Positions 4,559 through 60,918 of a stretch of DNA of 64,000 nt are shown piece by piece. The notes beneath the pieces are model-generated. The model searched no databases. It saw only the letters and a program-made list of their open reading frames with translations, and was not told the origin of the DNA. The translations under genes were made by a program, and so were the position numbers. The DNA comes from Octopus sinensis (lineage: Eukaryota), in assembly GCF_006345805.1 (NCBI RefSeq), contig NC_043010.1:59644001-59708000 (forward strand), in the 5' to 3' direction. Position 1 is the first letter of the stretch; each line of letters begins with the position of its first letter.

Positions 4559-7500
4559 ATGTTGTTACACCTGTGTGTTTTGCTGACTTTCTTCCACTGT
4601 TATTTAAGTGAAGATATCACATTCCATGTTAAGGAAGAGAATATTCCTCATACGTATGTAGGGGACATTGCTACTGACTTACAGAAATCAGACAGCTCCT
4701 TCTTAAAGAATAAGGATTTAATTACATTTAGTCAACTGCAACAAAAGGGAGAACAGTTGTTCAATGTGACTAAAACAGGTAAACTGTACACTGTTGAGAC
4801 ATTGGATGCTGAGTCTGTGTGTAGTTATGAGAAAGAATGTTTTGAAATCGTTAAAGTTGCTGTTCACAAATCCAAGACATTTATGAAGATCTTAAAGATT
4901 AAAGTCATAATAGAAGACATCAATGACCACCAACCTGAGTTTCCTGAGAAAGAAATTACTCTACATTTCAGAGAAGGAGATGGTAAAGGTATGAAGAAAA
5001 CCATTCCTAATGCCATTGACAAAGATAAAGGTTATCAAAACAGCTTAATTAATTATGAATTAAAAAATGATAGGGAACATTACTCACTATTAGTCTCCAA
5101 AAGAGCAGATGGAATATCTACGTTGGGAATTATTTTAGAAAAGAAATTAGACAGAGAAACGAAAGACAGTTACGATATTGAAGTCATTGCTAAAGATGGG
5201 GGAACTCCACCAAAACAATCTGTTTTAAATGTGAAAATATCTGTAGAAGACGAAAATGATAATCCACCACAATTTTCCCAAAGTATCTACAATGTCTCTA
5301 TTGAACATAAACATAAAAAGAATATTCCAGTAGTCACATTATCTGCCAGTGATTTAGACATTGGCAGGAATGGTAAAATATCTTTCTATTTCAGTCCGAA
5401 GACTGATATGCAAATGAAACAGTATTTTAATATTGATGAAAACTCTGGGAAAATATTCTTAATAAAATCTTTAGAGGTTGACAGCAAAAATTCTTTAAAA
5501 TTATATATTGAAGCTAAAGATAATGGGATTCCTCCTCTCAGTTCCATAGCAACGGTTATGGTAAATGTCATCAACCAACACAACAATCCTCCAAATATTG
5601 ATGTGAACTTTATTTCTACACAGAATCACAACACAGCCACCATTCTGGAAGACATCAAAGTTGGTAGTTTCATTGCTTATGTGATGGTCACTGACAATGA
5701 TGTTGGACACAATGGAGAGGTGAACTGTCATATCAAAGACGACACATTCAAACTACAGTCAATGGGATCGAAGGAATATAAAATAGTTCTAAAGAAAGCA
5801 GTAGACAGAGAGACACAGGAACATTATCACTTTACTGTGTCGTGTGAAGATAAAGGATTACCTGCTCTGAAAACTGATAAAGATCTGTCAATCCAAGTGT
5901 TGGATGTGAATGATGTAGAACCACACTTTACGAAAGACACATTCAAGTTCCTTACCTATGAGAATGACAAAGCTAATTTCCCTATTGGCTTTATCAATGC
6001 TACAGACCCAGATATTGGTAAGGGAGGTGAATTGTCTTATTCTCTGAGAAATAAACAGCAATATCGTCTGCCATTCCAGATTATCAACTCTGGCTTTATT
6101 TCAACAAACCAGTCTTTAGACAGAGAACACAGAGATTTCTATGAGTTTGAGGTTTTTGTGAAAGACAATGGAAGCCCATCTCTGAATAACACAGTGAATG
6201 TTGAAGTGGAAGTATTGGATAGAAATGATAATGCTCCATATTTTACATTTCCTAGTGTTGACCATTTCACTCTTAATGTCCACTATCATCCGCAAAGTAA
6301 GAACGACATCACAGTTCTGAAAGCATCTGATATAGACAGTCACATGAATGCTTTTCTCAGGTACGAAATCGTTTCAGGTAATGAGAGACAGTTATTCAAA
6401 CTGGACTCTTTCACTGGTGTGTTATCTTACTCTCGCACAGTTTACCAAAATGATGCCGGATCATATGAGCTTGAGTTTGTTGTGAAAGACAGTGGTACTC
6501 CAGTTCTGTCAGCAACAACTAGTGTGTCTTTGACACTGACTGTTAGTAACAAGACGTCACCAATGTTCACAGCTGTGCACCTACCAAGTGATAACACAAT
6601 AGATGCGACATTGTTGATTATCATTGTAGTAGCAGCTGTGATAGTATCTATAGCTATTGTGGTTTCTATAACCCTGTGTATTGTGAGATGTAACAATGTG
6701 AGAAATAGCTCATCTGAAAGAACAGCAGAAGAGAAACAGGCATACCAATGTCGCAATGAGATGAGACAGTTGATCTATCAAGGTAACAACAGTGTACCTG
6801 TGATGTCAGGTAATCGAGGAGAATTGTCAGACAGATATGGTCATTCGAGGAGCCATTACTATCCTGAAGACTGGAAGACATCGACAATGAACCGGACACT
6901 TCAGAAGTCTACAAAGGTAAGTTTTATTTCAATAAACATTCTCTTAGTAAATAATGTGTGTTTAAGAATAATTTAGCTTCAGTGTTTTATCCAGTGTTTT
7001 GTATTTGAAATTACGGTTCACTTGACCAATTTTACATTATTGTTTTGCTTCATCATGTCCAAAATATATCTTATGTATGGTTAAGAAAATGTGATATGGT
7101 GTTGAATACTTATTTATTTATTTTTATTACTGTGATTACTGCTGTCCATTTCTTGTAAGATATTTTATGTCAAATTTACAGTCTGGCATTTTTAATGTTT
7201 GTATATAGGGTTGCACCTGATTTTGTGGAAACTTCCTAGCTACAATTCAGATATCTTAGTAAGCTGTGCTTCTGGAGATTAAGGTTCCAAATGCAACATT
7301 ACTGTACACACACTGACTGTCTAAACTTGCACTTTCCATTCAGAAAGAAGTCTCTAAGAGAGTCTGTCGAATCAATTATAAAAATATTGTTAATAATTGT
7401 CTGTGACTTTAGCTAAGTTGTACTGTATATAATTCTTGTAGGAAATGAGAATGGCAGTACTGAAAGATTAAAAAATCTTTACAGATTTAAAAAATTTGAC

Positions 7501-9500
7501 TGATTAAATATATATAAAATATTGTCTGTCCTCGGTAGTATAGTGGTAAGTATCCCCGCCTGTCACGCGGGAGACCGGGGTTCGATTCCCCGCCGGGGAG
7601 GCCATTACTTTTTGTAGTGAAGGCGCATGGCTCAGTGGTTAGAGCGTCGAGCTTACGATCGTGAGGTTGTGAGCTCGAATCCCGGACCGGGCTGCGTGTT
7701 GTGTTCTTGAGCAAAACACTTTATTTCACGTTGCTCCAGTTCACTCAGCTGTAGAAATGAGTTGCGACGTCACTGGTGTCAAGCTGTATCGACCTTTGTC
7801 TTTCCCTTGGATAACACTGGTGGCGTGGAGAGGGGAGGCTGGTATGCATGGGCGACTGCTGGTCTTCCATAAACAACCTTGCCCGGACTTGTGTCTAGGA
7901 GGGTAACTTTCTAGGTGCAATCCCATGGTCATTCATGACCGAAGGGGGTCTTTACCCTTTATTGTCAGTATTACCTGATCATAAATATAGAAAAAAAATT
8001 TTAATACCACCAAAAACCAGTAAATTTTGTGTCGGTGGCACATAAAAAACACCATCCGAGCGTGGCCGTCTGCCAGCCTCGTCTGGCACCTGTGTCGGTG
8101 GCACATAAAATCACCCACTACACTCTCGGAGTGGTTGGCGTTAGGAAGGGCATCCAGCTGTAGAAACACTGCCAGATCTGACTGGCCTGGTGCAGCCTTC
8201 GGGCTTGCCAGACCCCAGTTGAACCGTCCAACCCATGCTAGCATGGAAAGCGGACGTTAAACGGTGATGATGATTTTAGTGTCAATCATGAATGTTATGT
8301 TTATAGTATGTGTTGTTACTATTATATTTTACAGCAGAAATACAGTCAACCCATTGAGGTGACATCTTACGGAGACAACAGACCATCCTCTAACTATCCC
8401 ACTGACACATTGACCAGTCGTAAGAGCAGTGGACAGTGCTGGAGTGAGCGGTCAAGCCGACAGTATGAAGAAATACCAGCAATGTCAGGTAAAACAATTT
8501 CATTCATTCATGTTTTGTTATTAATTTCATTAACATAATTTAATTTTCACTCTGTCTAATTTCAGCAACTCAGAAATAATCTCTCAAGGCTTCTTTCAGT
8601 ATTTCTCTATTCATTACTGTTATGATAGCTGTTATTTTATTGTCAGTATAAAAGAAATTTATTTTTACTTAGAGAGGTAGACAGTCTATTTATCAAAGAC
8701 GAACGCATAGAATAAATCAGCAATAATTTCTTGTGGTGTTGAGCAAAGATCGAATAAAGGGGTCTATGTGTACTCGTTTGACCTATTAGAAATATCAGCC
8801 ACATCACCCTCAATCACACTCCACCGTCTTGAATATGGGAAGGATTTGTTAGATACCTTCTTTGATAGATTGTACATGAAAAAAAATAAAAGGATTAGAC
8901 AGTCATGACTGGAATGTGTTTGATCATGTCTGCACACTTGCGGTTGATCTGGAGCTAACTTACATATTACCAAATAATGTTTTTTATAGAAGAAATACTC
9001 CTTGTATATTTAAATAATTTTCAAATGATAACTGTCTAATTTCCTACTTAGAACATTATCACATACCCTACTATTGCTGTGTTAGAGATGCACCAAAGAA
9101 TCCATTGAAATACAATGTTTAGAATCTACACTTAAACTATATTGGATTCTGCTGAATTTTCGCAACATAAAATATCATTGACTGAACTGACTTAATCCAA
9201 CATATAACCATTGCATATTTTTGAATACGATTCTTAAAGATTTTAGGGATGGTTAATTATTGAAAGTTTATATGTTAGACCTGTGAAGTTAGCAGGCAAG
9301 GCATTGATTACTAATATCAGTAAATAACTACTGGCTATGTGAATTATGTAATAAGTATATTTGATATGTGTGTTTCAGGAATCTATGGTGGTGCCCCACC
9401 CGATGTATCAAGCACTAGTGAGAGAGACCATTACCAAGACAGATATGTGAAACCTCCAGAGAGACAGTTACCTTCAACACCAGATGTTGTTGTCAGTTAA
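4559..9500 (+). CDS. Pcdh: Protocadherin G1: join(4559..6916, 8335..8488, 9379..9500), ~877 aa
   Basis: Signal peptide, six cadherin repeats (DxNDxxP, LDRE, AxDxG motifs), EC1 Cys-X5-Cys and TM LLIIIVVAAVIVSIAIVVSITLCIV. Acceptor TTTCAG before 4515; donor AAG|GTAAGT at 6916 (phase 0). Exon 3 TACAG|CAG..TCAG|GT (phase 1). Exon 4 TTTCAG|GA..TAA. The frame is continuous across both junctions. Confidence 0.92.
7529..7600 (+). tRNA. tRNA-Asp-GTC: tRNA-Asp (anticodon GTC) in intron 2 of G1
   Basis: 72 nt. Acceptor stem TCCTCGG/CCGGGGA with discriminator G, anticodon stem CCCGC/GCGGG with loop CT-GTC-AC, T-loop GGTTCGATTCC. T5 Pol III terminator at 7609-7613. Confidence 0.95.
7619..7959 (+). mobile_element. 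tRNA-derived SINE directly behind the tRNA-Asp
   Basis: A-box-like TGGCTCAGTGG and B-box-like GCTCGAATCC, followed by the central segment GTGTTCTTGAGCAAAACACTTT..CCAGTTCACTCAGCTG that also occurs in the SINE at ~57982. Confidence 0.75.
8027..8274 (+). mobile_element. SINE-like repeat with (GAT)n tail
   Basis: Ends CCAACCCATGCTAGCATGGAAAGCGGACGTTAAA..GATGATGAT; the same family occurs inverted at five or more other sites in the window. Confidence 0.7.
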
Positions 9501-10035: not shown

Positions 10036-10536
10036 AATATTGTATTTACATTTTAAATTACACACACATTAACAACATCAGCCATATTTTGTTAATATAA
10101 CCTCTCTGTTCTAAGGATTTCTATGTCAGTCTCTCTCCACATCAGACATGTTGGTGTTATATAGACTTATCATGGCTGACTGTTAGTGGAGCTGATGGGA
10201 TGTCTTCTCCCTCTCTGTATATGTATATTTCTCTCCTTTTTCTTTGTGGAGGGGAAACACAACATCTAGTCTGAGTGAGGCTAGAGTAAGCATCACCCAT
10301 CCTCCTCTCTCCTCTTCTCTCTCATACACAAATATACACACACTCTCACTAAACACCACACATCCACAAAGGAAGACTGAGAGGGAACTGCTGGTTCCCA
10401 CTGACTCACCACCAACACTATTCCATCAACATGAAGCCATTGTCACACCATAGCAGCAGTGACACAGACAACCATTAACAACAGAACATTGGGACCAAGT
10501 CACAGTTTATACAACAAAGGATTTTACACAATGAAG
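10036..10536 (+). promoter_or_regulatory. Conserved promoter/5'-leader module of G2, ending in donor ATGAAG|GTAAG
   Basis: Block A (~160 bp, 10036-10196) and block B (~175 bp, ending at 10536) recur almost unchanged before every gene, separated by a variable CT/CA-rich spacer. Strong 5' splice site and no in-frame ATG with the downstream CDS. The promoter role is inferred from position. Confidence 0.7.
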
Positions 10537-15169: not shown

Positions 15170-18100
15170 ATGTTGTGTCTGTATATTTTACTGACTTTCT
15201 TCCACTGTTCCCTAAGTGAAGATATCACATTCCATGTTAAAGAAGAGAATAATCCCTACACCTATGTAGGGGACATTGCTACTGATTTACAGAAATCAGA
15301 CAGCTCCTTCTTAAAGAATAAGGATTTAATTACATTTAGTCAACTCCAACAAAAGGGGGAACAGTTGTTCAATGTGACGAGAACAGGTAAACTGTACACT
15401 GTTGAGACATTGGATGCTGAGTCTGTGTGTAGTTATGAGAAAGAATGTTTTGGAATCGTTAAAGTTGCTGTTCACAAATCCAAGACATTTATGAAGATCT
15501 TAAAGATTAAAGTCATAATAGAAGACATCAATGACCACCAACCTGAATTTCCTAAGAATGAAATCACACTAAACTTTGGGGAAGGCGATGGTAAAGGTAT
15601 GAAGAAACCCATTCCTAATGCCATTGACAAAGATAAAGGTTATCAAAACAGCTTAATTAATTATGAATTAAATGGTGGAGGTAACTATTTTTCATTAAGT
15701 GTTTCCAAAGAAGCTGATGGTTTATCAACATTAGAAATAATTCTGGAAGATAAATTAGACAGAGAAAAGAAAGACAGTTACAATATTGAGGTCATTGCTA
15801 AAGATGGAGGAAACCCACCAAAACAATCTGTTTTAAATGTTAAAATATCTGTGGAAGATCAAAATGATAACAGACCACAGTTTTCTCAAAGTATCTACAA
15901 TGTTTCTATTGAACATAAACATAAAAAGAATATTCCAGTAGTCACATTATCTGCCAGTGATTTAGACATTGGCAGGAATGGTAAAATATCTTTCTATTTC
16001 AGTCAGAAAACTGATGAAAAAATAACAGAATACTTTCATTTAGATGAAAGTACTGGAAAGTTATTTCTTGAAAAGCCTATAAATTTTGGTAAGAAAGAAT
16101 CATTTAAATTATATGTGAAAGCCAAAGATAATGGAATTCCTCCTCTCAGTTCCATTGCAATAATTCAGATAAATGTTATCAACCAACACAACAATCCTCC
16201 AAATATTGATGTGAACTTTATTTCTACACAGAATCACAACACAGCCACCATTCTGGAAGACATCAAAGTTGGTAGTTTCATTGCTTATGTGATGGTCACT
16301 GACAATGATGTTGGACACAATGGAGAGGTGAACTGTCATATCAAAGACGACACATTCAAACTACAGTCAATGGGATCGAAGGAATATAAAATAGTTCTAA
16401 AGAAAGCAGTAGACAGAGAGACACAGGAACATTATCACTTTACTGTGTCGTGTGAAGATAAAGGATTACCTGCTCTGAAAACTGATAAAGATCTGTCAAT
16501 CCAAGTGTTGGATGTGAATGATGTAGAACCACACTTTACGAAAGACACATTCAAGTTCCTTACCTATGAGAATGACAAAGCTAATTTCCCTATTGGCTTT
16601 ATCAATGCTACAGACCCAGATATTGGTAAGGGAGGTGAATTGTCTTATTCTCTGAGAAATAAACAGCAATATCGTCTGCCATTCCAGATTATCAACTCTG
16701 GCTTTATTTCAACAAACCAGTCTTTAGACAGAGAACACAGAGATTTCTATGAGTTTGAGGTTTTTGTGAAAGACAATGGAAGCCCATCTCTGAATAACAC
16801 AGTGAATGTTGAAGTGGAAGTATTGGATAGAAATGATAATGCTCCATATTTTACATTTCCTAGTGTTGACCCTTTCACTCTTAATGTCCACTATCATCCG
16901 CAAAGTAAGAACGACATCACAGTTCTGAAAGCATCTGATATAGACAGTCACATGAATGCTTTTCTCAGGTATGAAATCGTTTCAGGTAACGAGAGACAGT
17001 TATTTAAACTGGATTCGTTCACTGGTGTGTTATCTTACTCTCGCACAGTTTACCAAAATGATGCCGGATCATATGAGCTTGAGTTTGTTGTGAAAGACAG
17101 TGGTACTCCAGTTCTGTCAGCAACAACTAGTGTGTCTTTGACACTGACTGTTAGTAACAAGACGTCACCAATGTTCACAGCTGTGCACCTACCAAGTGAT
17201 AACACAATAGATGCGACATTGTTGATTATCATTGTAGTAGCAGCTGTGATAGTATCTATAGCTATTGTGGTTTCTATAACCCTGTGTATTGTGAGATGTA
17301 ACAATGTGAGAAATAGCTCATCTGAAAGAACAGCAGAAGAGAAACAGGCATACCAATGTCGCAATGAGATGAGACAGTTGATCTATCAAGGTAACAACAG
17401 TGTACCTGTGATGTCAGGTAATCGAGGAGAGATGACAGACAGATATGGTCATTCAAGGAGCCATTACTATCCTGAAGACTGGAAGACATCGACAATGAGC
17501 AGATCTCTTCAGAAGTCTACAAAGGTAAGCTTTACTTCTATTGACTGTTTCTTAGTAGTTAGTGTTTAATTAAGAATTATATGACTGGAAGATATTAGTA
17601 GTGAGCAGATGTCTTCAAAAAGCCATAAATAAGGTATGTGTTAAGATTCTCTATTGATAATCTAATATTTTATTGAATAATGGTATTAAATGTTTGATAT
17701 AAATGTAACTTGTAAATGTTTAACTTTCTTCATATTGATTTTATGCCAATAACATATAATGATGATTGATATCAATATTTTATAAAGCATAGATTTTGTA
17801 AAATTTTCAAGATAATATGTTATATTAAAATTGCAATAAGACATAAAATAATTTGTTTTTTTAACAGCAGAAATACAGTCAACCGATTGAGGTGACATCT
17901 TATGGAGACAACAGACCATCTTCTCACTATCCCACTGACACATTGACCAGTCGTAAGAGCAGTGGACAGTGCTGGAGTGAGCGGTCAAGTAGACAGTATG
18001 AAGAAATACCAGCAATGTCAGGTAAAACACACTTGTCCATTCATATCATTATAATAATTCAATTCCCAGATGTGTAAGTTTTGTAACTCAGGGACATTGT

Positions 18101-19990
18101 TTCATTACTTCCCACAGTATTTCTCCGTTAATTACTTTATGTGAGATTAAGTGTTATCTTAGATACTTATTAGAGGGAATATTTGGCATTTGTGTGGCAT
18201 AAAATGACTCATCACTGAACTTGACATACACACATGGATGCCTTGTCATTTTTATCACTGAAAATTGTGTGTGTTTTGGTAGAGAAGCACCTGTTCATTT
18301 CACATATACCTTGAACATAATCTATGAATTATAGATGAAATCTACGTCAACCTAAGAATATTATGGTAGAAGACACTTGCAGAACGTATTATATAATGGT
18401 AGTGAATCTGAGACTTTCTGATTGCAAAATAAATGGTCTTAGAATTCAGTTATGCTTACACCTGATACAATATTTTACACACAAACACACACACATGTGT
18501 GTGAAAACTAACTAGCTAACTTTTGCTTTCTCATTCTAAAATATTTGGAGGAACTTATTTGACATCACTGACATCATTTTGCTATATTTCAACATACATC
18601 CAGTCACTGGGCTCCATGTGCATTATACTGTGGTGATGAACATTTCACTATGTGAAAAAATTACCAGGTCATTGCCTCCATTTATTTCAGAAACAATTGT
18701 CTACATACTAGGAAAACGTTTACATATTCTGAACTCTCTCTCTATATATTTCATGACACAGTATTATGAACTCTTCAGGATTGTATGTTTCTCATCATGA
18801 AATTTTGAAAATCCATTTAGGTTTATGAGTAGATTGGAACTTGTCCTTTATACAGGAAAGTGAATATAATGTATATCAATGGTTTCATCTGAGCACAAAG
18901 GGAAATGAGGAAAACCGGAAAGGACAATAAAAGTGAACCCTAAATATGTCATTTATAGAAAATAACATCTTTAAATATTGATAAAATAATAATATTTCTA
19001 AATCATCTTGTATCTTGGAAGGATCATTATGCCAATATCAAAGACATGCACTGGCTCTGTTTCACTTTTATTAGTCAACTTGTTAATCGTCAATCAGTTG
19101 TTTGATTAATCATTCAGCCATATCGAATCAATCAGCTAGGTTCTTCAGAATCCTTTTATTGCCATTTCCAATTCCATCAATGGTACGCTCTCTCAACTCC
19201 AAGTCTGTTTTCTAGTTTTCTGATTCTAGTTTCCTAGTTTCCTGATGTGAGAATGTGTGGGTGTGTGTGTGTGCGTGTGTGTGCGCGTGTGTGCATGCAT
19301 GGTGTAGATTCTGTAGATGTGTGACAGGGAACAACCAAATACAAAAATGAAATATTTTGAAATCTTTCATCCAATTTATTCATGTTATCATTAATAATGT
19401 GAATTTATTCATTTGTTAGTGTTTCTTACTTGATTTCTACCTATGTAACAATCTTTCTAGTAATGTGATGGGTTACCTTACAAAATAGCTATCTGATGTT
19501 CTACCTATAGGTGGTCTGTTATGTGATACAATGATTGAAGCACAACTGTGTTAAAGAATTCATTGAAAGATAACGAGGAAGTCTACACTTAAAGCCTATT
19601 GTATTTGTTTTTGGTTTTGCTGAAGTTTTACAACATCAATTATCATTAAACAAGCTGATGTATTTTAACCCACTCTAATCCAACAGATAATCAGTGGATT
19701 ATTAGTCAGATAAGGAATTTGGGGATGGTGAAACATAATTTCTTTGTTATTTTATATCTTAGTCTAGTAATTGTTGTGGAGAAGAGACTTTTTATTAATA
19801 TCAGTATATACCTGTTGTCTGTGTGGATTATGCTTTAAGTTTATTTGATGTATATATGTGTGTTTCAGGAATCTATGGTGGTGCCCCACCCGATGTATCA
19901 AGCACCAGTGAGAGAGACCATTACCAAGACAGATATGTGAAACCTCCAGAGAGACAGTTACCTTCAACACCAGATGTTGTTGCCAGTTAA
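15170..19990 (+). CDS. Pcdh: Protocadherin G2: join(15170..17524, 17868..18021, 19869..19990), ~876 aa
   Basis: Same architecture and splice phases as G1. Large exon starts at 15123; leader donor at 10536. Confidence 0.92.
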
Positions 19991-20447: not shown

Positions 20448-20925
20448 AATATTGTATTTACATTTTACATTACACACACATTAACAACATCAGCCATATT
20501 TTGTTAATATAACCTCTCTGTTCTAAGGATTTCTATGTCAGTCTCTCTCCACATCAGACATGTTGGTGTTATATAGACTTATCATGGCTGACTGTTAGTG
20601 GAGCTGATAGTGTGTGTTCTCTCACTACTCTGTCTTTGTGTGTGAGAGGCAACATCTAGTCTGAGAGAGGCTGTAGTAAGCATCACCCATCCTACTCCTC
20701 CTCCTCCCTTTCACACACACTCACACACACACACACACTAAACACCACACATCCACAAAGGAAGACTGAGAGGGAACTGCTGGTTCCCACTGACTCACCA
20801 CCAACACTATTCCATCAACATGAAGCCATTGTCACACCATAGCAGCAGTGACACAGACAACCATTAACAACAGAACATTGGGACCAAGTCACAGTTTATA
20901 CAACAAAGGATTTTACACAATGAAG
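20448..20925 (+). promoter_or_regulatory. Conserved promoter/leader module of G3
   Basis: Same blocks A and B; donor after 20925. Confidence 0.7.
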
Positions 20926-28100: not shown

Positions 28101-29716
28101 TTTTATTGTTTTGTCAGTGGATGAATGGCAGTACTTATGCATTTTCCCAGTGAAGGATTAACAAATCTTAACAACAGATTTAAAAAATTTGACAGATTGA
28201 ATACTTTAATAGCACCAAAAACCTGTTGTTATTACATATTTCACTGTCAAGCATAAATGTTATCTGTACAATGTCTTGTTACTATTGCATTTTACAGCAG
28301 AAATACAGTCAACCCATTGAGGTGACATCTTATGGAGACAACAGACCATCTTCTCACTATCCCACTGACACATTGACCAGTCGTAAGAGCAGTGGACAGT
28401 GCTGGAGTGAGCGGTCAAGCAGACAGTATGAAGAAATACCAGCAATGTCAGGTAAAACAATTTAATTCATTCATGTTTTGTTATTAATTTCATTAACATA
28501 ATTTAATTTTCACTATGTCTAATTTCAGCAACTCAGAAATAATCTTCTTTCAATATTTCTTTATCCATTACTGTTATGATTGCTGTTACCTTATTTTTCT
28601 ATTCTGGATGTAGTATTTCATAATGTCTACTTCATTAAAAGTATGCATCATATTGAGACGTATTGCAATGCAGATTATCTAGAAATCATCTCTGGGATAG
28701 AAAATGCCTCAGGGACTTTTGTGTTGTGATCTACAGCACAATTCAGACATTTGTCATTGGACATAGGTTTGTCAGTATAATAGAATTTGTTTTTATGTAA
28801 GAAGGTGAACATTCTAGTCTGTACATATTTAGATAATTTTCAAAATCTTTTATCATGAATATTTCAACTATTATTAAAAACATAAATCCTCTTATTTATG
28901 TGTTTAACATTTATGGATTGCATCTTTACAGTAACGTGATGGGTTTCATCATCATCATATCATCATCATTTAATGTCCGTTTTCCATGCTGGCATGGGTT
29001 GGATGACTTGACAGGAACTAGTAAAGCCAGGGCCTGTACCAGATTCCAGTCTGTTTTGGTTTGGGTGCTATGGCTTGATGCCCTTCTTAATGCCAACCAC
29101 TCTACAGAGTGTACTGGATGCTTTTTATATGGCACTTGCGTGGCAACTTGATTTTAGGACTTCAGTTCTGTTGTGGTGGGCAGGTCTTCGCAAGTACAGC
29201 AATGCACCACATATGTTGGTCCTTAAATGGGAACTGTCTAATTTCCTACTTAGAACATTATCACATACCCTACTATTGCTTTGTTAGAGATGCACCAAAG
29301 AATCCATTGAAATACAATGTTTAGAATCTACACTTAAACTATATTGGATTCGGCTGAATTTTGGCAACATAAAATATCATTGACTGAACTGACTTAATCC
29401 AACATATAACCATTGTATATTTTTGAATACGATTCCTAAAGATTTTAGGGATGGTTGAAGGTATCTTTAATTATTGTTAGTTTATATGTTAGACCTGTGA
29501 AGTTAGCAGGCAAGGCATTGATTACTAATATCAGTAAATAACTATTGGCTATATGAACTATGTAATAAGTATATTATATATGTGTGTGTTTCAGGAATCT
29601 ATGGTGGTGCCCCACCTGATGTATCAAGCACCAGTGAGAGAGACCATTACCAAGACAGATATGTGAAACCTCCAGAGAGACAGTTACCTTCAACACCAGA
29701 TGTTGTTGTCAGTTAA
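25127..29716 (+). CDS. Pcdh: Protocadherin G3: join(25127..27484, 28298..28451, 29595..29716), ~877 aa
   Basis: Same architecture. Large exon starts at 25072, so the TTG start at 25073 in the track is not the initiator; leader donor at 20925. Confidence 0.92.
28947..29140 (-). mobile_element. (GAT)n-tailed SINE-like repeat; duplicate at ~49158-49355
   Basis: Same family. Present in intron 3 of G3 and G5 but not G1. Confidence 0.65.
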
Positions 29717-30251
29717 GTGAGACTGAGAAAGGAACACAACAGAAATAATATCACCTTCAACATTCACACAACATTTAAAAGCAACAGAAATATTTTAGTT
29801 TGGTTATGATATTGCCCACATAGGACTGAATATCATCATATTTGTCACAATGTATTATATATGACACTCTCTCCCCCCCTCTCTCTCTGTATATACATAC
29901 ATATATGTATATATATCTTGGGGATATTTCCTCAGATGAAGAGAATCAAAACCTTTAGACATAAATGATTTCAATCAAATTGTGATAAAGAAATTAGGTA
30001 AAAATTAGTCAAGTCATATATTTTAGGTACTTAAAATTATACATTCCATTTGGAAAATACAATATAATATTTAGAATGTTTACTAATTTATGATATGAAT
30101 ATTTAATTTTTTATATAAATTATGCAGAAAATGTTAATATATGAGAATATATATTTCACATGGCTAAGAAATAAACATTTCGTTGTTTATGCTCATATAA
30201 AAGATTTAGTTTAGAATTAGGTCAGACACACACACACTAACTGTTATTGTC

Positions 30252-35392: not shown

Positions 35393-38300
35393 ATGTTGTG
35401 TCTGTATATTTTACTGACTTTCTTCCACTGTTCCCTAAGTGAAGATATCACATATCATGTTGAAGAAGAGAATAATCCCTATACCTATGTAGGGGACATT
35501 GCTACTGACTTACAGAAATCAGACGACTCCTTCTTAAAGAATAAGGATTTAATTACATTTAGTCAACTGCAACAAAAGGGAGAACAGTTGTTCAATGTGA
35601 CGAGAACAGGTAAACTGTACACTGTTGAGACATTGGATGCTGAGTCTGTGTGTAGTTATGAGAAAGAATGTTTTGAAATCGTTAAAGTTGCAGTTCACAA
35701 ATCCAAGACATTTATGAAGATCTTAAAAATTAAGGTCATAATAGAAGACATCAATGACCACCAACCTGAGTTTCCTAAGAATGAAATCACACTAATCTTT
35801 GGGGAAGGAGACAGAGATGGAATGAAGAAAACCATTCCTAATGCCATCGACAAAGATAAAGGTTATCAAAACAGCTTAATTAATTATGAATTAAATGGTG
35901 GAGGTAACTATTTTTCATTATTTGTTTCTAAACAAGCTGATGGAATTTCCACTTTAGGAATCATTTTAGAAGATAAATTAGACAGAGAAAAGAAGGACAA
36001 TTACAATATTGAGGTCATTGCTAAAGATGGAGGAACTCCACCAAAACAATCTGTTTTAAATGTTAAAATATCTGTAGAAGATGAAAATGATAATGCACCA
36101 CAATTTTCTCAAAGTATCTACAATGTCTCTATTGAACATAAACATAAAAAGAATATTCCAGTAGTCACATTATCTGCCAGTGATTTAGACATTGGCAGGA
36201 ATGGTAAAATATCTTTCTATTTCAGTCAAAAAACTGATGAAAAAATAAAAGAATACTTTCATTTAGATGAAAGTACTGGGAAGTTATTTCTTGAAAAACC
36301 TATAAATTTTGGTAAGAAAGAATCATTTAAATTATATGTGAAAGCTAAAGATAATGGAATTCCTCCTCTAAGTTCCATTGCAATAATTCAGATAAATGTT
36401 ATCAACCAACTCAACAATCCTCCAAATATTGATGTGAATTTTATTTCTACACAGAATCACAACACAGCCACCATTCTGGAAGACATCAAAGTTGGTAGTT
36501 TCATTGCTTATGTGATGGTCACTGACAATGATATTGGACACAATGGACAGGTGAACTGTCATATCAAAGATGACACATTCAAACTACAGTCAATGGGATC
36601 GAAGGAATATAAAATAGTTCTAAAGAAAGCAGTAGACAGAGAGACACAGGAACATTATCACTTTACTGTGTCGTGTGAAGATAAAGGATTACCTGCTCTG
36701 AAAACTGATAAAGATCTGTCAATCCAAGTGTTGGATGTGAATGATGTAGAACCACACTTTACGAAAGACACATTCAAGTTCCTTACCTATGAGAATGACA
36801 AAGCTAATTTCCCTATTGGCTTTATCAATGCTACAGACCCAGATATTGGTAAGGGAGGTGAATTGTCTTATTCTCTGAGAAATAAACAGCAATATCGTCT
36901 GCCATTCCAGATTATCAACTCTGGCTTTATTTCAACAAACCAGTCTTTAGACAGAGAACACAGAGATTTCTATGAGTTTGAGGTTTTTGTGAAAGACAAT
37001 GGAAGCCCATCTCTGAATAACACAGTGAATGTTGAAGTGGAAGTATTGGATAGAAATGATAATGCTCCATATTTTACATTTCCTAGTGTTGACCCTTTCA
37101 CTCTTAATGTCCACTATCATCCGCAAAGTAAGAACGACATCACAGTTCTGAAAGCATCTGATATAGACAGTCACATGAATGCTTTTCTCAGGTACGAAAT
37201 CGTTTCAGGTAACGAGAGACAGTTATTTAAACTGGATTCGTTCACTGGTGTGTTATCTTACTCTCGTACAGTTTACCAAAATGATGCCGGATCATATGAG
37301 CTTGAGTTTGTTGTGAAAGACAGTGGTACTCCAGTTCTGTCGGCAACAACTAGTGTGTCTTTGACACTGACTGTTAGTAACAAGACGTCACCAATGTTCA
37401 CAGCTGTGCACCTACCAAGTGATAACACAATAGATGCGACATTGTTGATTATCATTGTAGTAGCAGCTGTGATAGTATCTATAGCTATTGTGGTTTCTAT
37501 AACCCTGTGTATTGTGAGATGTAACAATGTGAGAAATAGCTCATCTGAAAGAACTGCAGAAGAGAAACAGGCATACCAATGTCGCAATGAGATGAGACAG
37601 TTGATCTATCAAGGTAACAACAGTGTACCTGTGATGTCAGGTAATCGAGGAGAGATGTCAGATAGATATGGTCATTCAAGGAGCCATTACTATCCTGAAG
37701 ACTGGAAGACATCGACAATGAGCAGATCTCTTCAGAAGTCTACAAAGGTAAGCTTTACTTCTATTGACTGTTTCTTAGTACTTAGTGTTTAATTAAGAGT
37801 TATATGACTGGAAGATATTTGTAGTGAGCAGATGTCTTCAAAAAGCCATAAATAAGGTATGTGTTAAGATTCTCTATTGATAATCTAATATTTTACTGAA
37901 TAATGGGTATTAAACGTGTGATATAAACGTAACTTGTAAATGTTTAACTTTCTCCATATTGATTTTATGCCAATAACATATAATGATGATTGATATCAAT
38001 ATTTTATAAAGCATAGATTTTGTAAAATTTTCAAGGTAATATGTTATATTAAAATTGCAATAAGACATAAAACAATTTGTTTTTTTAACAGCAGAAATAC
38101 AGTCAACCGATTGAGGTGACATCTTATGGAGACAACAGACCATCTTCTCACTATCCCACTGACACATTGACCAGTCGTAAGAGCAGTGGACAGTGCTGGA
38201 GTGAGCGGTCAAGTAGACAGTATGAAGAAATACCTGCAATGTCAGGTAAAAAAAACTTATCCATTCATATCATTATAATAATTCAATTCCCAGATGTGTA

Positions 38301-40213
38301 ATTTTTGTAACTCAGGGACATTGTTTCATTACTTCCAACAGTATTTCTCCATTAATTACTTTATGTGAGATTAAGTGTTATCTTAGATACTTATTAGAGG
38401 GAATATCTGGCATTTGTGTGGCATAAAAATGACTCATCACTGAACTTGACATACACACATGGATGCCTTGTCATTTTTATCACTGAAAATTGTGTGTGTT
38501 TTGGTAGAGAAGCACCTGTTCATTTCACATGTACTTTGAACATAATCTATGAATTATAGATGAAACCCACGTCAACCTAAGAATATTATGGTAGAAGACA
38601 CTTGCAGAACGTATTATATAATGGTAGTGAATCTGAGACTTTCTGATTGCAAAATAAATGGTCTTAGAATTCAGTTATGCTTGCACCTGATACAATATTT
38701 TACACACAAACACACATGTGTGTGTGAAAACTAACTAGCTAACTTTTGCTTTCTCATTCTAAAATATTTAGAGGAACTTATTTGACATCACTGACATCAT
38801 TTTGCTATATTTCAACATACATTCTGTCACTGGACTGCATGTGCATTATACTGTGGTGATGAACATTTCACTATGTGAAAAAATTACCAGGTCATTGCCT
38901 CCATTTATTTCAGAAACAATTGTCTACATACTAGGGAAACGTTTACATATTCTGCACTCTCTCTCTCTATACATTTCATAACACAGTATTATGAACTCTT
39001 CAGGATTGTATGGTTCTCATCATGAAATTTTGAAAATCCATGTAGGTTTATGAATAGAATGGAACTTGTCCTTTATACAGGAAAGTGAATATAATGTGTA
39101 CCAATGGTTTCATCTGAGCACAAAGGGAAATGAGGACTACCTGAAAGGATAAGAAAAGTGAACCCTAAATATGTCATTTATAGAAAATAACATCTTTAAA
39201 TATTGATAAAATAATAATATTTCTAAATCATCTTGTATCTTGGAAGGATCATTATGCCAATATCAAAGACATGCACTGGCTCTGTTTCACTTTTATTAGT
39301 CAACTTGTTAATCGTCAATTAACTTCTCAGTTGTTTGATTAATCATTCAGCCATATCTAATCAATCAGCTAGGTTCTTCAGAATCCTTTTATTGCCATTT
39401 CCAATTCCATCAATGGTACGCTCTCTCAGCTCCAAGTCTGTTTCCTAGTTTTCTGATTCTAGTTTCCTAGTTTCCTGATGTGAGAATGTGTGTGTGTGTG
39501 CGCACGCGCGCGCATGCATGCATGGTGTAGATTCTGTAGATGTGTGACAGGGAACAACCAAATACAAAAATGAAATATTTTGAAATCTTTCATCCAATTT
39601 ATTCATGTTATCATTAATAATGTGAATTTATTCATTTGTTAGTGTTTCTTACTTGATTTCTACCTATGTAACAATCTTTCTAGTAATTTGATGGGTTTCC
39701 TTACAAAATAGCTATCTGATGTTCTACCTATAGGTGGTCTGTTATGTGATACAATGATTGAAGCACAACTGTGTTAAAGAATTCATTGAAAGATAACGAG
39801 GAAGTCTACACTTAAAGCCTATTGTATTTGTTTTTGGTTTTGCTGAAGTTTTACAACATCAATTATCATTAAGCATCCTGGCATATCTTAACCCACTCTA
39901 ATCCAACAGATAATCATTGGATTATTAGTCAGATAAGGAATTTGGGGATGGTGAAACATAATTTCTTTGTTATTTTATATCTTAGTCTAGTAATTGTTGT
40001 GGACAAGAGACTTTTTATTAAAATCAGTATATATCTGTTGTCTGTGTGGATTATGCTTTAAGTTTATTTGATGTATATATGTGTGTTTCAGGAATCTATG
40101 GTGGTGCCCCACCTGATGTATCAAGCACCATTGAAAGAGACCATTACCAAGACAGATATGTGAAACCTCCAGAGAGACAGTTACCTTCAACACCAGATGT
40201 TGTTGTCAGTTAA
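35393..40213 (+). CDS. Pcdh: Protocadherin G4: join(35393..37747, 38092..38245, 40092..40213), ~876 aa
   Basis: Same architecture; closest to G2. Large exon starts at 35346; leader donor at 30764. Confidence 0.92.
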
Positions 40214-48300: not shown

Positions 48301-49930
48301 ATTGTTTTGTCAGTGGAGAAATGGCAGTACTTATGCATTTTCCTACTGAAAGATTAAAAAATCTTAACAACAGATTTAGAACATTTGACTGATTGAATAC
48401 TTTAATAGCACCAAAAGCCTGTTATTATTACATATTTCACTGTCAGTCATAAATGTTATCTGTACAACATGTCTTGTTACTATTGCATTTTACAGCAGAA
48501 ATACAGTCAACCAATAGAGGTGACATCTTATGGAGACAACAGACCATCCTCTAACTATCCCACTGACACACTGACCAGTCGTAAGAGCAGTGGACAGTGC
48601 TGGAGTGAGCGGTCAAGCAGACAGTATGAAGAAATACCAGCAATGTCAGGTAAAACAATTTCATTCATTCATGTTTTGTTATTAATTTCATTAACATAAT
48701 TTAATTTTCACTCTGTCTAATTTCAGCAACTCAGAAATAATCTCTCATTGCTTCTTTTAATATTTCTTTATTCATTACTGTTATGATTGCTGTTACCTTA
48801 TTTTTCTATTCTGGATGTAGTGTTTCATAATGTCTACTTCATTAAAAGTATGCATCATATTGAGACGTATTGCAATGCAGATTATCTAGAAATCATCTCT
48901 GGGATAGAAAATGCCTCAGGGACTTTTGTGTTGTGATCTACAGCACAATTCAGACATTTGTCATTGGACATAGGTTTGTCAGTATAATAGAATTTGTTTT
49001 TATGTAAGAAGGTGAACATTCTAGTCTGTACATATTTAGATAATTTTCAAAATCTTTTATCTATCATGAATATTTCAACTATTATTAAAAACATAAATCC
49101 TCTTATTTATGTGTTTAACATTTATGGATTGCATCTTTACAATAATGTGATGGGTTTCATCATCATCATATCATCATCATCATCATTTAATGTCCGTTTT
49201 CCATGCTAGCATGGGTTGGATGACTTGACAGGAACTAGTAAAGCCAGGGCCTGCACCAGATTCCAGTCTGTTTTGGTTTGGGTGCTATGGTTTGATGCCC
49301 TTCTTAATGCCAACCACCCTACAGAGTGTACTGGATGCTTTTTATATGGCACTTACGTGGAAACTTGATTTTAGGATTTCAGTTCTGTTGTGGTGGGCAG
49401 GTTTTCGCAAGTACAGCAGTGCACCACATATGTTGGTCTTCAAATGATAACTGTCTAATTTCCTACTTAGAACATTATCACATACCCTACTATTGCTGTG
49501 TTAGAGATGCACAAAGAATCCATTGAAATACAATGTTTAGAATCTACACTTAAACTATATTGGATTCTGCTGAATTTTCACAACATAAAATATCATTGAC
49601 TGAACTGACTTAATCCAACATATAACCATTGTATATTTTTGAATACGATTCCTAAAGATTTTAGGGATTGTTAAAGGTATCTTTAATTATTGTTAGTTTA
49701 TATATTAGACCTGTGAAGTTAGCAGGCAAGGCATTGATTACTAATATCAATAAATAACTACTGGCTATATGAACTATGTAATAAGTATATTTGATATGTG
49801 TGTTTCAGGAATCTATGGTGGTGCCCCACCCGATGTATCAAGCACCAGTGAGAGAGACCATTACCAAGACAGATATGTGAAACCTCCAGAGAGACAGTTA
49901 CCTTCAACACCAGATGTTGTTGTCAGTTAA
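45325..49930 (+). CDS. Pcdh: Protocadherin G5: join(45325..47682, 48496..48649, 49809..49930), ~877 aa
   Basis: Same architecture; closest to G3. Large exon starts at 45270; an extra in-frame ATG lies at 45310; leader donor at 41149. Confidence 0.92.
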
Positions 49931-60400: not shown

Positions 60401-60918
60401 ACACACAGTTAATTTCTTATTTAATTGAGATTCTGTTTTTTTTTTTTTTTTGCATTTTTCTTAATAAGGGTTTGGACTGTTATTTAAAAATGTTCTGTTT
60501 AACATTGGTATTAGAGAAATAAGTAACAGGAAAATACTACATTGTTTTGTTTTTTCTTCATCAAAATGTTATTACTTTCAGTCCTGGAAAACATTTCTAT
60601 TTTGTTCCAAGTAAAATATTTTAGCATTTTGATCCCTTTTGAAGTGTAACATGAACATGTATTCTGACAAGCAGACTAACATTATACAATATTATTAAAA
60701 ATCTGAATGTATGCATTGTATTCATGCAATAATCTGATGGATCTCTTTACTGTCTATATGAACTATGTAGTAAGTTTATTTGAATATGTGTTTCAGGAAT
60801 CTATGGTGGTGCCCCACCCGATGTATCAAGCACCAGTGAGAGAGACCATTACCAAGACAGATATGTGAAACCTCCAGAGAGACAGTTACCTTCAACACCA
60901 GATGTTGTTGCCAGTTAA
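54483..60918 (+). CDS. Pcdh: Protocadherin G6: join(54483..56840, 58478..58631, 60797..60918), ~877 aa
   Basis: Same architecture. Large exon starts at 54439; leader donor at 50996. Introns 2 and 3 are largely unrelated to those of G1-G5. Confidence 0.92.
57755..57960 (-). mobile_element. SINE, minus orientation
   Basis: Contains GGTACTTAATTTATTGACCC..GGATGAAAGGCAAAGTTGAC..GGAATTTGAACTCAG; the reverse complement gives a B-box-like GAGTTCAAATTCC. Confidence 0.6.
57982..58300 (+). mobile_element. tRNA-derived SINE
   Basis: A-box-like TGGCTTAGTG and B-box-like GAGTTCAATTCC, then GTGTCCTTGAGCAAAATACTTT..CCAGTCCACTCAGCTG as in the 7619 SINE. Confidence 0.65.
59705..60200 (-). mobile_element. (GAT)n-tailed SINE-like repeat with internal GGCAC(A/G)GGTGCCA short repeats
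   Basis: Same family tail plus 3-4 imperfect ~30-bp internal repeats; a second tail remnant lies at ~60148. Confidence 0.6.

What the first reader, a model, noticed from the sequence alone, without database searches (positions are those of the whole stretch)
8461..9482. The spliced cytoplasmic tail carries paired Src-family SH2 (QYEEIP) and SH3 (RQLPSTP) ligands in all six genes
Seen: joining exons 3 and 4 gives ...SGQCWSERSSRQYEEIPAMSGIYGGAPPDVSSTSERDHYQDRYVKPPERQLPSTPDVV(V/A)S*. In G1, QYEEIP is at 8461-8478 and RQLPSTP at 9462-9482, and both are invariant in G1-G6. Established: pYEEI is the optimal Src-family SH2 ligand (the polyoma middle T peptide reads QYEEIP), RxLPxxP is the class I SH3 consensus, and vertebrate Pcdh-alpha/CNR proteins were first found through Fyn binding. 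Inference: a shared Src/Fyn-recruiting signalling tail, possibly a second convergence with vertebrate clustered Pcdhs. The ORF track misses exon 4 in this frame.
Basis: partly seen in the sequence, partly recalled or inferred. Interest (0 to 1): 0.72.

Follow-up and report, generated by a model that had tools for sequence, protein, structure and literature searches.

The report
Conserved YEEIP motif in octopus protocadherin tails
Six tandem octopus protocadherin genes end in a spliced, disordered tail whose YEEIP motif is the best-conserved piece of the cytoplasmic domain across octopod protocadherins and fits an ideal Src-type docking site, giving a testable handle on how these neuronal adhesion proteins signal.

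Summary
QYEEIP and RQLPSTP each occur six times, at the stated coordinates. Both lie in two small exons with canonical GT-AG borders. The spliced G1 protein (877 aa) is identical to RefSeq XP_029645420.2 of Octopus sinensis, so the splicing is already annotated.

Invariance among G1-G6 says little about the motifs. The six genes are 97-99% identical from EC4 to the stop, and 88 of 91 tail residues are invariant.

The informative evidence comes from other paralogues. Among the 120 best octopod protocadherin hits, 73 carry YEEIP in 35 different flanking contexts. In an unbiased alignment of 39 non-redundant tails, Y-E-E-I-P is the most conserved contiguous block of the cytoplasmic domain. Synonymous codon changes put the constraint on the protein.

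RQLPSTP is confined to this subfamily. Other subfamilies carry KPLPAVP or RRLPPVP elsewhere, and 21 of 31 YEE[ILV]-bearing tail clusters have no such site. The pairing is therefore not general.

SH2/SH3 binding is untested. A YxxØ sorting signal is a serious rival. One brain cDNA of a paralogue differs from its genome model only at the motif tyrosine (Y>C), which makes it an RNA-editing candidate.

Verdict: a real, conserved linear motif with an unproven function.

The parts
4559..6916 (+). G1 large exon: signal peptide, six cadherin repeats, transmembrane helix and membrane-proximal cytoplasmic part. Donor AAG|GTAAGT after 6916.
   Evidence: ORF and translation. Six Pfam Cadherin stretches. 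Donor and frame. Identical to RefSeq XP_029645420.2.
8335..8488 (+). It encodes QKYSQPIEVTS...SGQCWSERSSRQYEEIPAMS(G). The acceptor is a NAGNAG (acag|CAG|AAA) and the donor is CAG|GTAAAA.
   Evidence: 97.1% identical among the six copies against 65-69% for the introns.
8461..8478 (+). QYEEIP in G1. The Tyr codon TAT is at 8464-8466. The core YEEIP is the family-wide conserved motif, read here as a candidate phosphotyrosine/SH2 docking site or YxxØ signal.
   Evidence: Codon variation in paralogues.
9379..9500 (+). It encodes (G)IYGGAPPDVSSTSERDHYQDRYVKPPERQLPSTPDVVVS*.
   Evidence: 98.3% identical among the six copies.
9462..9482 (+). RQLPSTP in G1. It matches the class I SH3 pattern [RK]xLPxxP and also contains a PxTP proline-directed kinase site.
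   Evidence: Resembles the FAK site ERALPSIPK.
17868..18021 (+). G2 exon A (QYEEIP at 17994-18011). G2 large exon is 15170-17524.
19869..19990 (+). G2 exon B (RQLPSTP at 19952-19972); the protein ends in VVAS.
28298..28451 (+). G3 exon A (QYEEIP at 28424-28441). G3 large exon is 25127-27484.
29595..29716 (+). G3 exon B (RQLPSTP at 29678-29698).
38092..38245 (+). G4 exon A (QYEEIP at 38218-38235; the Pro codon is CCT here). G4 large exon is 35393-37747.
40092..40213 (+). G4 exon B (RQLPSTP at 40175-40195).
48496..48649 (+). G5 exon A (QYEEIP at 48622-48639). G5 large exon is 45325-47682.
49809..49930 (+). G5 exon B (RQLPSTP at 49892-49912).
58478..58631 (+). G6 exon A (QYEEIP at 58604-58621). 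G6 large exon is 54483-56840.
60797..60918 (+). G6 exon B (RQLPSTP at 60880-60900); the protein ends in VVAS.

Best explanation
Exons A and B encode the last 91 residues of a roughly 170-residue cytoplasmic tail, probably disordered, in six tandem protocadherin genes of Octopus sinensis.

Shown: the pentapeptide Y-E-E-I-P, placed 3-6 codons before the end of exon A, is the most conserved contiguous element of octopod protocadherin cytoplasmic domains, and the constraint acts on the protein.

Inferred: the tyrosine is phosphorylated. pY-E-E-I then docks a group-I SH2 domain, most likely that of a Src-family kinase; Fer/Fes or Tec-type kinases are the alternative readers.

Inferred for this subfamily: the downstream ERQLPSTP binds the SH3 domain of the same kinase. 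The tail would then engage SH3 and SH2 together and open and activate the kinase at sites of homophilic adhesion, as the FAK linker does with pY397 plus RALPSIP.

Inferred: when unphosphorylated, the same YEEI can act as a YxxØ adaptor signal, so phosphorylation may switch the receptor between signalling and internalisation. Skipping of exon A, and possibly A-to-I editing of the Tyr codon, would produce isoforms without the site.
For: - Real exons and real protein: GT-AG borders, matching phase, exact identity with RefSeq XP_029645420.2. Exons are 97-98% identical against 65-69% for introns, and 12 synonymous against 3 non-synonymous variable codons.
- Deep conservation of the motif only: 86 of 120 octopod Pcdhs have Y[DE][DE][ILVM] and 73 have YEEIP, in 35 different flanking contexts. 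The motif is in 31 of 50 non-redundant tail clusters, against 0.64 expected from shuffles (maximum 5).
- In an unbiased alignment of 39 tails, the five columns carry 3.05-3.48 bits each, the only such run in the whole tail; flanking columns carry 1-2 bits.
- The constraint is on amino acids. Codons vary: TAT/TAC, GAA/GAG/GAT, ATA/TTA, CCA/CCT.
- The residue is almost always Tyr (32 of 39; Phe in one tail), as expected for a phospho-acceptor or YxxØ and not for an LIR.
- E-E-I after Tyr is the Src-family SH2 optimum, and the MidT-derived Fyn SH2 ligand contains Q-pY-E-E-I-P.
- [RK]xLPxxP is present in 15 of 50 clusters against 0.23 expected, at three different positions: RRLPPVP, RQLPSTP and KPLPA[VLI]P. 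An unnamed cephalopod Pcdh ends in RPLPPLP.
- ERQLPSTPD resembles the proven Src SH3 site of FAK, ERALPSIPK, which works together with pY397.
- The tail lies after the TM helix and is modelled without secondary structure, with pLDDT mostly below 50.
- Molluscan neurons use Src kinases (Aplysia Src2).
- Vertebrate Pcdh-alpha binds Fyn (Kohmura 1998, as cited).
Against: - There is no phosphorylation or binding data of any kind.
- YEEI also satisfies YxxØ, with acidic X residues and Ile that favour lysosomal adaptors. Vertebrate clustered Pcdhs are heavily trafficked to endolysosomes.
- The strongly conserved Pro at +4 is not explained by what is known of Src-family SH2 selectivity.
- The -1 position is variable and lacks the Ile/Val preferred by Src-family kinases as substrates (my knowledge).
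- The SH3-type site is absent from 21 of 31 YEE[ILV]-bearing tail clusters and is lost in two close relatives.
- Its position before the last Pro is Thr rather than a hydrophobic residue.
- LPSTP is equally a PxTP MAP-kinase/CDK5-type site.
- The tail clusters are related by descent, so the shuffle statistics overstate independence.
- The AF2 model used a single sequence, so it is weak evidence of disorder.
Confidence: 0.42

Rival explanations
1. YEEIP is mainly a tyrosine-based sorting signal (YxxØ). It would be read in the unphosphorylated state by the mu subunits of AP-2, AP-1 or AP-3 and would drive endocytosis and endolysosomal delivery of the protocadherin, without SH2 signalling.
For: Y-x-x-I/L/V is met in 31 of 50 tail clusters, and Tyr is nearly invariant. 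The motif lies in a cytosolic tail that appears unstructured. Vertebrate clustered Pcdhs are prominently trafficked to endolysosomes through cytoplasmic motifs. Acidic X residues with Ile at +3 favour AP-3 and lysosomal signals (my knowledge: Ohno 1998; Bonifacino and Traub 2003).
Against: Canonical YxxØ recognition leaves the two X positions and +4 almost free. Here E, E and P are as conserved as Tyr itself. No Met or Phe is seen at +3, although both serve well as Ø. The two readings are not exclusive; CTLA-4 YVKM is a precedent (my knowledge).
Confidence: 0.25
2. The tyrosine is phosphorylated, but the reader and writer is not a Src-family kinase. Candidates are Fer/Fes (optimal substrate and SH2 motif both close to Y-E-E-I), a Tec or Syk/Shark-type kinase, or an adaptor. 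The two conserved YxxP motifs (KYSQP, RYVKP) would recruit Abl, Crk or Nck-type SH2 proteins.
For: The pY-E-x-I/V class is shared by several SH2 domains (my knowledge: Songyang 1993-1995). Additional conserved tyrosine motifs of YxxP type sit at the start of exon A and in exon B. The -1 residue is not the Ile/Val that Src-family kinases prefer as substrates.
Against: The exact hexapeptide of the best-studied Src-family ligand is present. It is accompanied in this subfamily by a Src/FAK-like class I SH3 site.
Confidence: 0.15
3. RQLPSTP is not an SH3 ligand. It would be a proline-directed Ser/Thr phosphorylation site (PxTP; MAPK or CDK5 type), or a WW/Pin1 site, inside a conserved C-terminal block (YQDRYVKPPERQLPSTPDV).
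For: An [ST]-P dipeptide is kept in almost all variants (LPSTP, LPTTP, LPATP, LPITP, LPSPP), including RQLSLTP, where the LP of the SH3 core is lost. The whole block is conserved in the subfamily, not only the PxxP.
Against: Class I patterns of the type [RK]xLPxΦP recur in other subfamilies without an S/T-P: KPLPAVP, KPLPALP, RRLPPVP, RPLPPLP. They are enriched 65-fold over shuffles.
Confidence: 0.3
4. The conservation reflects RNA-level constraint, not a protein motif. GAAGAA would be a purine-rich splicing enhancer next to the donor of a small cassette exon, or part of a double-stranded structure needed for editing.
For: The motif always lies 3-6 codons from the exon A donor. Exon A is skipped in some RefSeq isoforms. 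TATGAAGAAATACC is identical in three paralogue lineages.
Against: More distant paralogues change the codons but keep the residues: TAT GAT GAG ATA CCT, TAT GAG GAA TTA CCA, TAC GAA GAA ATA CCA. An enhancer does not explain invariant Tyr, Ile and Pro.
Confidence: 0.04
5. YEEI is an LC3/GABARAP-interacting region ([WFY]xx[LIV] with acidic residues) that links the protocadherin to autophagic or endolysosomal membranes.
For: The core pattern fits. Gamma-Pcdhs colocalise with LC3 in a manner that depends on the intracellular domain.
Against: LIRs tolerate Trp and Phe, but here the position is Tyr in 32 of 39 tails, with Phe in one tail (P0131, HFDDLP) and no Trp. Acidic residues upstream of the aromatic, typical of LIRs, are not conserved.
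Confidence: 0.05

Closest known systems
Bipartite Src-docking site of focal adhesion kinase (pY397-A-E-I plus the linker SH3 site ERALPSIPK)
   Same: A pY-x-E-I type SH2 site and a class I R-x-L-P-S-x-P SH3 site sit a few tens of residues apart in a flexible segment of an adhesion-linked protein. ERQLPSTPD shares E, R, L, P, S and P with ERALPSIPK.
   Different: The order is reversed: in FAK the SH3 site is N-terminal of the tyrosine, here it is 34 residues C-terminal. FAK autophosphorylates its tyrosine, whereas a protocadherin has no kinase domain. Binding is proven for FAK and untested here.
Hamster polyomavirus middle-T-derived pYEEI phosphopeptide, the reference high-affinity ligand of Src-family SH2 domains
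   Same: The hexapeptide Q-Y-E-E-I-P is identical.
   Different: That is a viral oncoprotein site used as a biochemical reagent. Identity over six residues shows a fit to the pocket, not that the octopus tyrosine is phosphorylated or bound.
Vertebrate clustered protocadherin-alpha (CNR) and Fyn
   Same: Tandem arrays of neuronal protocadherins with diversified N-terminal EC domains and a conserved cytoplasmic end that (there) binds a Src-family kinase (Kohmura 1998, as cited).
   Different: Vertebrate genes share one set of constant exons; here every gene has private copies of exons A and B. No vertebrate CM motifs were found in octopus Pcdhs and no Pfam cytoplasmic family matches the tail. 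To my knowledge the vertebrate alpha constant region has no YEEI.
Drosophila Dscam1 cytoplasmic tail and the SH2/SH3 adaptor Dock/Nck (my knowledge: Schmucker 1998)
   Same: A diversified neuronal self-recognition receptor whose tail combines PxxP and tyrosine motifs for an SH3/SH2 protein.
   Different: Not examined here.
Dual-use tyrosine motifs such as CTLA-4 YVKM (AP-2 when unphosphorylated, SH2 proteins when phosphorylated; my knowledge)
   Same: One YxxØ sequence can serve both sorting and SH2 docking, with phosphorylation as the switch. This is the combined model proposed here.
   Different: Different sequence class and different readers. Nothing has been shown for the octopus motif.

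Membership tests
Src-family SH2 ligand (pY-[E/D/T]-[E/N/D]-[I/V/L/M]) | Tyr followed by acidic residues at +1 and +2 and an aliphatic residue at +3 | tested here: met
   Y-E-E-I in all six genes. E 33/39, E 32/39 and I/L 35/39 in non-redundant tails.
Src-family SH2 ligand (pY-[E/D/T]-[E/N/D]-[I/V/L/M]) | Cytosolic and accessible (disordered) location | tested here: inconclusive
   About 120 residues after the TM helix. The AF2 single-sequence model has no secondary structure and pLDDT mostly below 50 in the tail. Single-sequence models are weak evidence.
Src-family SH2 ligand (pY-[E/D/T]-[E/N/D]-[I/V/L/M]) | The tyrosine is phosphorylated in vivo | not testable with these tools
   Needs phosphoproteomics of octopus nervous tissue.
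Src-family SH2 ligand (pY-[E/D/T]-[E/N/D]-[I/V/L/M]) | Direct phospho-dependent binding to an SH2 domain | not testable with these tools
   Needs ITC, FP or pull-down with octopus Src-family SH2 domains.
Class I SH3 ligand ([RK]xxPxxP; Src type RxLPxΦP) | Basic residue, then x-L-P-x-Φ-P | tested here: inconclusive
   R-Q-L-P-S-T-P fits [RK]xLPxxP, but the Φ position is Thr. Other subfamilies have better fits: KPLPAVP, RRLPPVP, RPLPPLP.
Class I SH3 ligand ([RK]xxPxxP; Src type RxLPxΦP) | Conservation beyond close paralogues | tested here: inconclusive
   Kept in the G subfamily of Octopus and Argonauta (RQLPSTP, RQLPTTP, RQLPATP, KQLPITP, RKLPSPP), lost in P0059 and P0063. Absent from 21 of 31 YEE[ILV]-bearing tail clusters.
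Class I SH3 ligand ([RK]xxPxxP; Src type RxLPxΦP) | Binding to an SH3 domain | not testable with these tools
   Needs biochemical assays.
YxxØ tyrosine-based sorting signal | Y-x-x-bulky hydrophobic in a cytosolic tail | tested here: met
   Y-E-E-I/L/V.
YxxØ tyrosine-based sorting signal | X positions and +4 largely free | tested here: not met
   E, E and P(+4) carry 3.1-3.5 bits each, as much as the Tyr. This suggests a more demanding or an additional reader.
Vertebrate-type clustered protocadherin locus | Many variable exons spliced to one shared set of constant exons | tested here: not met
   Six copies of exon A and six of exon B, one pair after each large exon.
ITIM / ITAM | [SIVL]xYxx[ILV], or two YxxL/I motifs 6-12 residues apart | tested here: not met
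   The -2 residue is R, K, G and others. The next Tyr, 10 residues on, reads YGGA.
Delta-protocadherin CM1/CM2/CM3 or Pfam cadherin cytoplasmic families | Sequence match to the described motifs or profiles | tested here: not met
   No Pfam family hits the 168-aa tail at E up to 10. Styfhals 2019 found no vertebrate CM motifs in octopus Pcdhs. The tail has no Phe, so it has no RVxF or WIRS motif.

The most novel reading that the evidence does not exclude
YEEIP is the signalling hub of octopod protocadherins and is a regulated switch. Phosphorylation would toggle the receptor between Src-type kinase recruitment and adaptor-mediated internalisation. Neurons would tune the fraction of competent molecules by skipping exon A and by A-to-I editing of the Tyr codon (Y>C, as seen in the single difference between an O. 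vulgaris brain cDNA and its genome model). If true, three independently evolved neuronal self-recognition systems would couple to SH2/SH3 proteins: vertebrate clustered Pcdhs with Fyn, insect Dscam1 with Dock, and octopod Pcdhs with Src.
Probability: 0.12. Interest if true: 0.8.

Novelty: new member of a known kind. Interest (0 to 1): 0.6.

Why it matters
How the expanded octopus protocadherins (more than 160 genes) signal inside the cell is an open question. Published surveys found no vertebrate-type cytoplasmic motifs and list only extracellular, transmembrane and PP1-type motifs. No held paper mentions YEEI together with protocadherin.

A single pentapeptide that is the best-conserved part of the tail, and that matches the optimum of a well-understood reader domain, turns that question into a short list of experiments. 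It also bears on whether octopus and vertebrate protocadherin expansions converged only in gene number and adhesion code, or also in downstream signalling.

The possible removal of the tyrosine by RNA editing or exon skipping would link the motif to the two best-known sources of cephalopod transcript diversity.

Tried and rejected
- Pfam scan of the tail found nothing.
- A profile HMM of the tail against 1.84 billion representatives gave 8 hits. Six are octopod Pcdh tails or fragments. Two (P0006, P0007) are low-complexity repeat proteins and were discarded. The tail is therefore not detectable outside octopods by sequence. This cannot exclude a short motif in squids.
- Word-index searches with the tail alone returned only 3-5 proteins. 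The full-length search was needed.
- ITIM, ITAM, PP1 (RVxF) and WIRS readings were rejected on sequence.
- The splicing-enhancer-only explanation was rejected after finding synonymous variation in distant paralogues.
- Albertin 2015, Wang and Ragsdale 2017 and Liscovitch-Brauer 2017 are not held. Prior description of the motif there cannot be fully excluded, and the editing-site tables could not be checked.
- The species behind the Logan runs (SRR11869384-94, SRR25158139, ERR129213xx) could not be identified. Conservation in decapodiforms and Nautilus is therefore untested.
- The look-up of P0092 found no contig.
- I first took the window for O. bimaculoides. An exact look-up shows it is O. 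sinensis.
- The suspected homology of the start of exon A with the vertebrate VCD motif rests on memory plus a verbal description. It was not tested.
Full report
**Observation.** A six-frame search of the window finds QYEEIP six times and RQLPSTP six times. There are no extra copies. The window holds six tandem protocadherin genes. Each has a large exon of about 2.36 kb that encodes a signal peptide, six cadherin repeats, a transmembrane helix and the start of the cytoplasmic domain.

**Gene structure.**
- In G1 the large exon ends at 6916 (AAG|GTAAGT).
- Exon A is 8335-8488 (ttacag|CAG ... TCAG|GTAAAA).
- Exon B is 9379-9500 (tttcag|GAATC ... TAA).
- All six genes assemble into 876/877-residue proteins with GT-AG introns.
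- An exact-sequence look-up shows that the spliced G1 protein is RefSeq XP_029645420.2 of Octopus sinensis. The gene span on chromosome CM016872.1 equals 4559-9500 of the window.
- The same junctions appear in RefSeq or GenBank models of O. vulgaris, O. bimaculoides and Argonauta hians.

The splicing is therefore correct and already annotated. Exon B sits in a 53-aa ORF, which is why an ORF list with a 60-aa threshold misses it.

**What the invariance among G1-G6 is worth.** Among the six copies:

| Segment | Identity |
|---|---|
| Exon A | 97.1% |
| Exon B | 98.3% |
| 3' half of the large exon | 98.9% |
| 5' half of the large exon (EC1-3) | 88% |
| Introns | 65-69%, with large indels |

In the 91 tail codons, 15 vary, 12 of them synonymously. 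This shows that the two small exons are real and under purifying selection, or are being homogenised. It also means that 88 of 91 residues are invariant, so invariance of the two motifs within this array is not evidence for the motifs themselves.

**The informative comparison.** A full-length search returned 120 octopod protocadherin cluster representatives, at 96% down to 51% identity.
- 86 of them carry Y[DE][DE][ILVM] in their C-terminal part and 73 carry exactly YEEIP. There are 35 different flanking contexts, for example RQ-, KH-, GL-, EQ-, GY-, SP-, DQ- and KP- before the motif.
- After clustering the tails into 50 groups, the motif is present in 31. Composition-preserving shuffles give a mean of 0.64 and a maximum of 5. 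With Pro at +4 the count is 24 against 0.04 expected.
- In a MAFFT alignment of the 39 non-redundant tails of at least 135 residues, made without reference to the motif, the five consecutive columns Y-E-E-I-P carry 3.05-3.48 bits each. No other run of columns in the cytoplasmic domain comes close, and the neighbouring columns carry 1-2 bits.
- The motif always lies 3-6 codons before the donor of exon A.
- In distant paralogues the codons differ while the residues stay: TAT GAT GAG ATA CCT, TAT GAG GAA TTA CCA, TAC GAA GAA ATA CCA. The constraint therefore acts on the protein and not merely on a GAAGAA splicing enhancer.

**The proline motif.**
- RQLPSTP is found only in the subfamily to which the window genes belong, in Octopus and Argonauta. 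Variants are RQLPTTP, RQLPATP, KQLPITP and RKLPSPP. Two relatives have lost it (RQLSLTP, KQLSLTQ).
- It is part of a conserved block, YQDRYVKPPERQLPSTPDV, that follows a variable linker.
- Other subfamilies carry patterns of the same class elsewhere. KPLPA[VLI]P lies at the end of long tails, directly after a conserved Y-x-K-P, and is probably homologous to RYVKP...LPSTP. RRLPPVP or RKLPPVP lies at the very end of the large exon. One unnamed cephalopod protein ends in RPLPPLP.
- [RK]xLPxxP occurs in 15 of 50 tail clusters, against 0.23 expected.
- 21 of the 31 clusters with YEE[ILV] have no such site.

Class I SH3-type sites are thus a recurrent feature of these tails, but the specific pairing seen here is a subfamily trait.

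**Context.**
- No Pfam family matches the tail.
- A profile of the tail finds only octopod sequences among 1.84 billion representatives.
- A single-sequence AlphaFold model gives a confident TM and juxtamembrane helix and an unstructured, low-confidence tail. This is weak evidence, but it is consistent with a disordered region that carries linear motifs.
- RefSeq isoforms of two paralogue groups skip exon A and so lack YEEIP.
- The exon A acceptor is a NAGNAG, which gives isoforms with or without one Gln.
- The O. vulgaris protocadherin QBA31128, assembled from nervous-system RNA-seq, differs from the genome-derived model of the same gene at one residue of 852. That residue is Y843C, the tyrosine of its YEELP. 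A single-base Y-to-C change is always A-to-G, the signature of A-to-I editing, and editing is reported to be enriched in cephalopod protocadherins. This is one observation and could be a polymorphism or an error. Its position is nonetheless striking.

**Mechanism.**
- Shown: a conserved pentapeptide, constrained at the protein level and almost always containing Tyr, sits at a fixed place in a cytosolic tail that appears disordered.
- Inferred: its reader. The sequence after Tyr is the optimum for Src-family SH2 domains, and the standard MidT-derived Fyn SH2 ligand contains the same hexapeptide.
- In this subfamily, ERQLPSTPD lies 34 residues downstream. It resembles ERALPSIPK, the Src SH3 site of FAK, which cooperates with pY397 to bind and activate Src.
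- Molluscan neurons use Src kinases, and vertebrate Pcdh-alpha binds Fyn.
- I therefore favour a phosphotyrosine docking site for a Src-type kinase, reinforced in this subfamily by an SH3 site, at a confidence of about 0.4.

**Main rival.** The main rival is a YxxØ sorting signal. YEEI fits it, acidic X residues and Ile suit lysosomal adaptors, and vertebrate clustered protocadherins are strongly endolysosomal. Against a pure sorting role, E, E and P(+4) are as conserved as the Tyr. The two roles can coexist, with phosphorylation as the switch.

**Other readings.** These are other SH2 readers (Fer/Fes, Tec), an LIR (disfavoured, because Trp never and Phe only once replace Tyr), and RNA-level constraint (disfavoured). 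For RQLPSTP, a PxTP kinase site is a real alternative, because an S/T-P is kept even where the LP core is lost.

**Comparison and membership.**
- The sequence criteria for a Src-family SH2 ligand and for YxxØ are met. Those for a class I SH3 ligand are met loosely, because Thr occupies the hydrophobic position.
- Phosphorylation and binding, which are the defining functional features, could not be tested.
- The locus does not have the vertebrate architecture of shared constant exons. Each gene has its own exons A and B.
- ITIM, ITAM, RVxF, WIRS and delta-Pcdh CM motifs are absent.

**Novelty.**
- Published octopus surveys report no vertebrate-like cytoplasmic motifs. Their motif lists stop at EC, TM and PP1-type patterns, and their alignments cover EC domains only.
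- No held paper contains both YEEI and protocadherin.
- The primary genome papers are not held, so prior mention cannot be fully excluded.
- I rate this as a new member of a known kind: a conserved tyrosine/proline linear-motif pair in an adhesion receptor tail. Its interest lies in making octopus protocadherin signalling directly testable.

**Limits.**
- The tail clusters are related by descent, so the shuffle controls overstate independence.
- Gene models that lack exon A may be incomplete rather than truly motif-free.

Noticed in passing
window 8333-8337 (and the same place in G2-G6): The exon A acceptor is a NAGNAG (acag|CAG|AAA). RefSeq isoforms of 877 and 876 aa differ by exactly this Gln: KSTKQKYSQP against KSTKKYSQP.
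   Followed up: partly
protein P0005 (QBA31128, O. vulgaris) against P0015; not in the window: A brain-transcriptome cDNA of a paralogue differs from its genome model at one residue of 852. The change is Y843C, the tyrosine of YEELP, which implies A-to-G and makes it an RNA-editing candidate.
   Followed up: partly
paralogue proteins P0201-P0203, P0207, P0209 and P0210 (O. sinensis, O. vulgaris, O. bimaculoides): RefSeq isoforms skip exon A and join the large exon to a different last exon. They lose the whole KYSQP...YEEIP module.
   Followed up: partly
window 8338-8352 (KYSQP) and 9441-9455 (RYVKP): There are two further conserved tyrosine motifs of YxxP type. One is at the start of exon A. 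The other is in exon B, as Y-x-K-P in many subfamilies, directly before LPxxP in the long-tail subfamily.
   Followed up: partly
window about 10340-10520, with the same relative place after each gene (20730-20878, 30556-30715, 40950-41100, 50813-50947, 61618-61774): A block of about 150 nt lies about 850 nt downstream of each stop codon, after CT/CA microsatellites. It is 100% identical in all six units and 88-91% identical downstream of a divergent exon B in a paralogue contig (L005). Weaker copies lie at 23456-23568 and 43683-43795. There is no Rfam match. It could be a 3'UTR element or a repeat.
   Followed up: partly
window 4559-60918 as a whole: The array is built from a two-gene unit: 9501-15169 matches 29717-35392 at 95.4%. 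Within the large exons the EC1-3 half is 88% identical and the EC4-to-cytoplasm half is 98.9% identical. This suggests homogenisation of the 3' half, diversification of the 5' half, or both.
   Followed up: partly
window 1599-3494 (+): A 631-aa ORF upstream of G1 has a hAT-family dimerisation domain, DUF4371 and a Spin-doc zinc finger. It is a domesticated or resident hAT transposase, and is also called as a gene in the public annotation.
   Followed up: partly
window 7529-7600 (+): A tRNA-Asp(GTC) gene or tRNA-derived element lies inside intron 1 of G1 only. This is part of why that intron is 1418 nt, against 343-813 nt in G2-G5.
   Followed up: no
protein P0188 (Logan assembly, species unknown): A cephalopod protocadherin lacks YEEIP and has ...GWSEGEVPDFDYYSPV... 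at that place. It ends in TRPLPPLPI, the textbook optimal class I Src SH3 core.
   Followed up: no
window 8335-8430 (start of exon A): QKYSQPIEVTS...SRKSS resembles the vertebrate clustered-Pcdh VCD trafficking motif as it is described in words: conserved Q, Y and S, then a conserved V, then basic/Ser/Thr residues. The resemblance is recalled from memory and was not tested against real vertebrate sequences.
   Followed up: no
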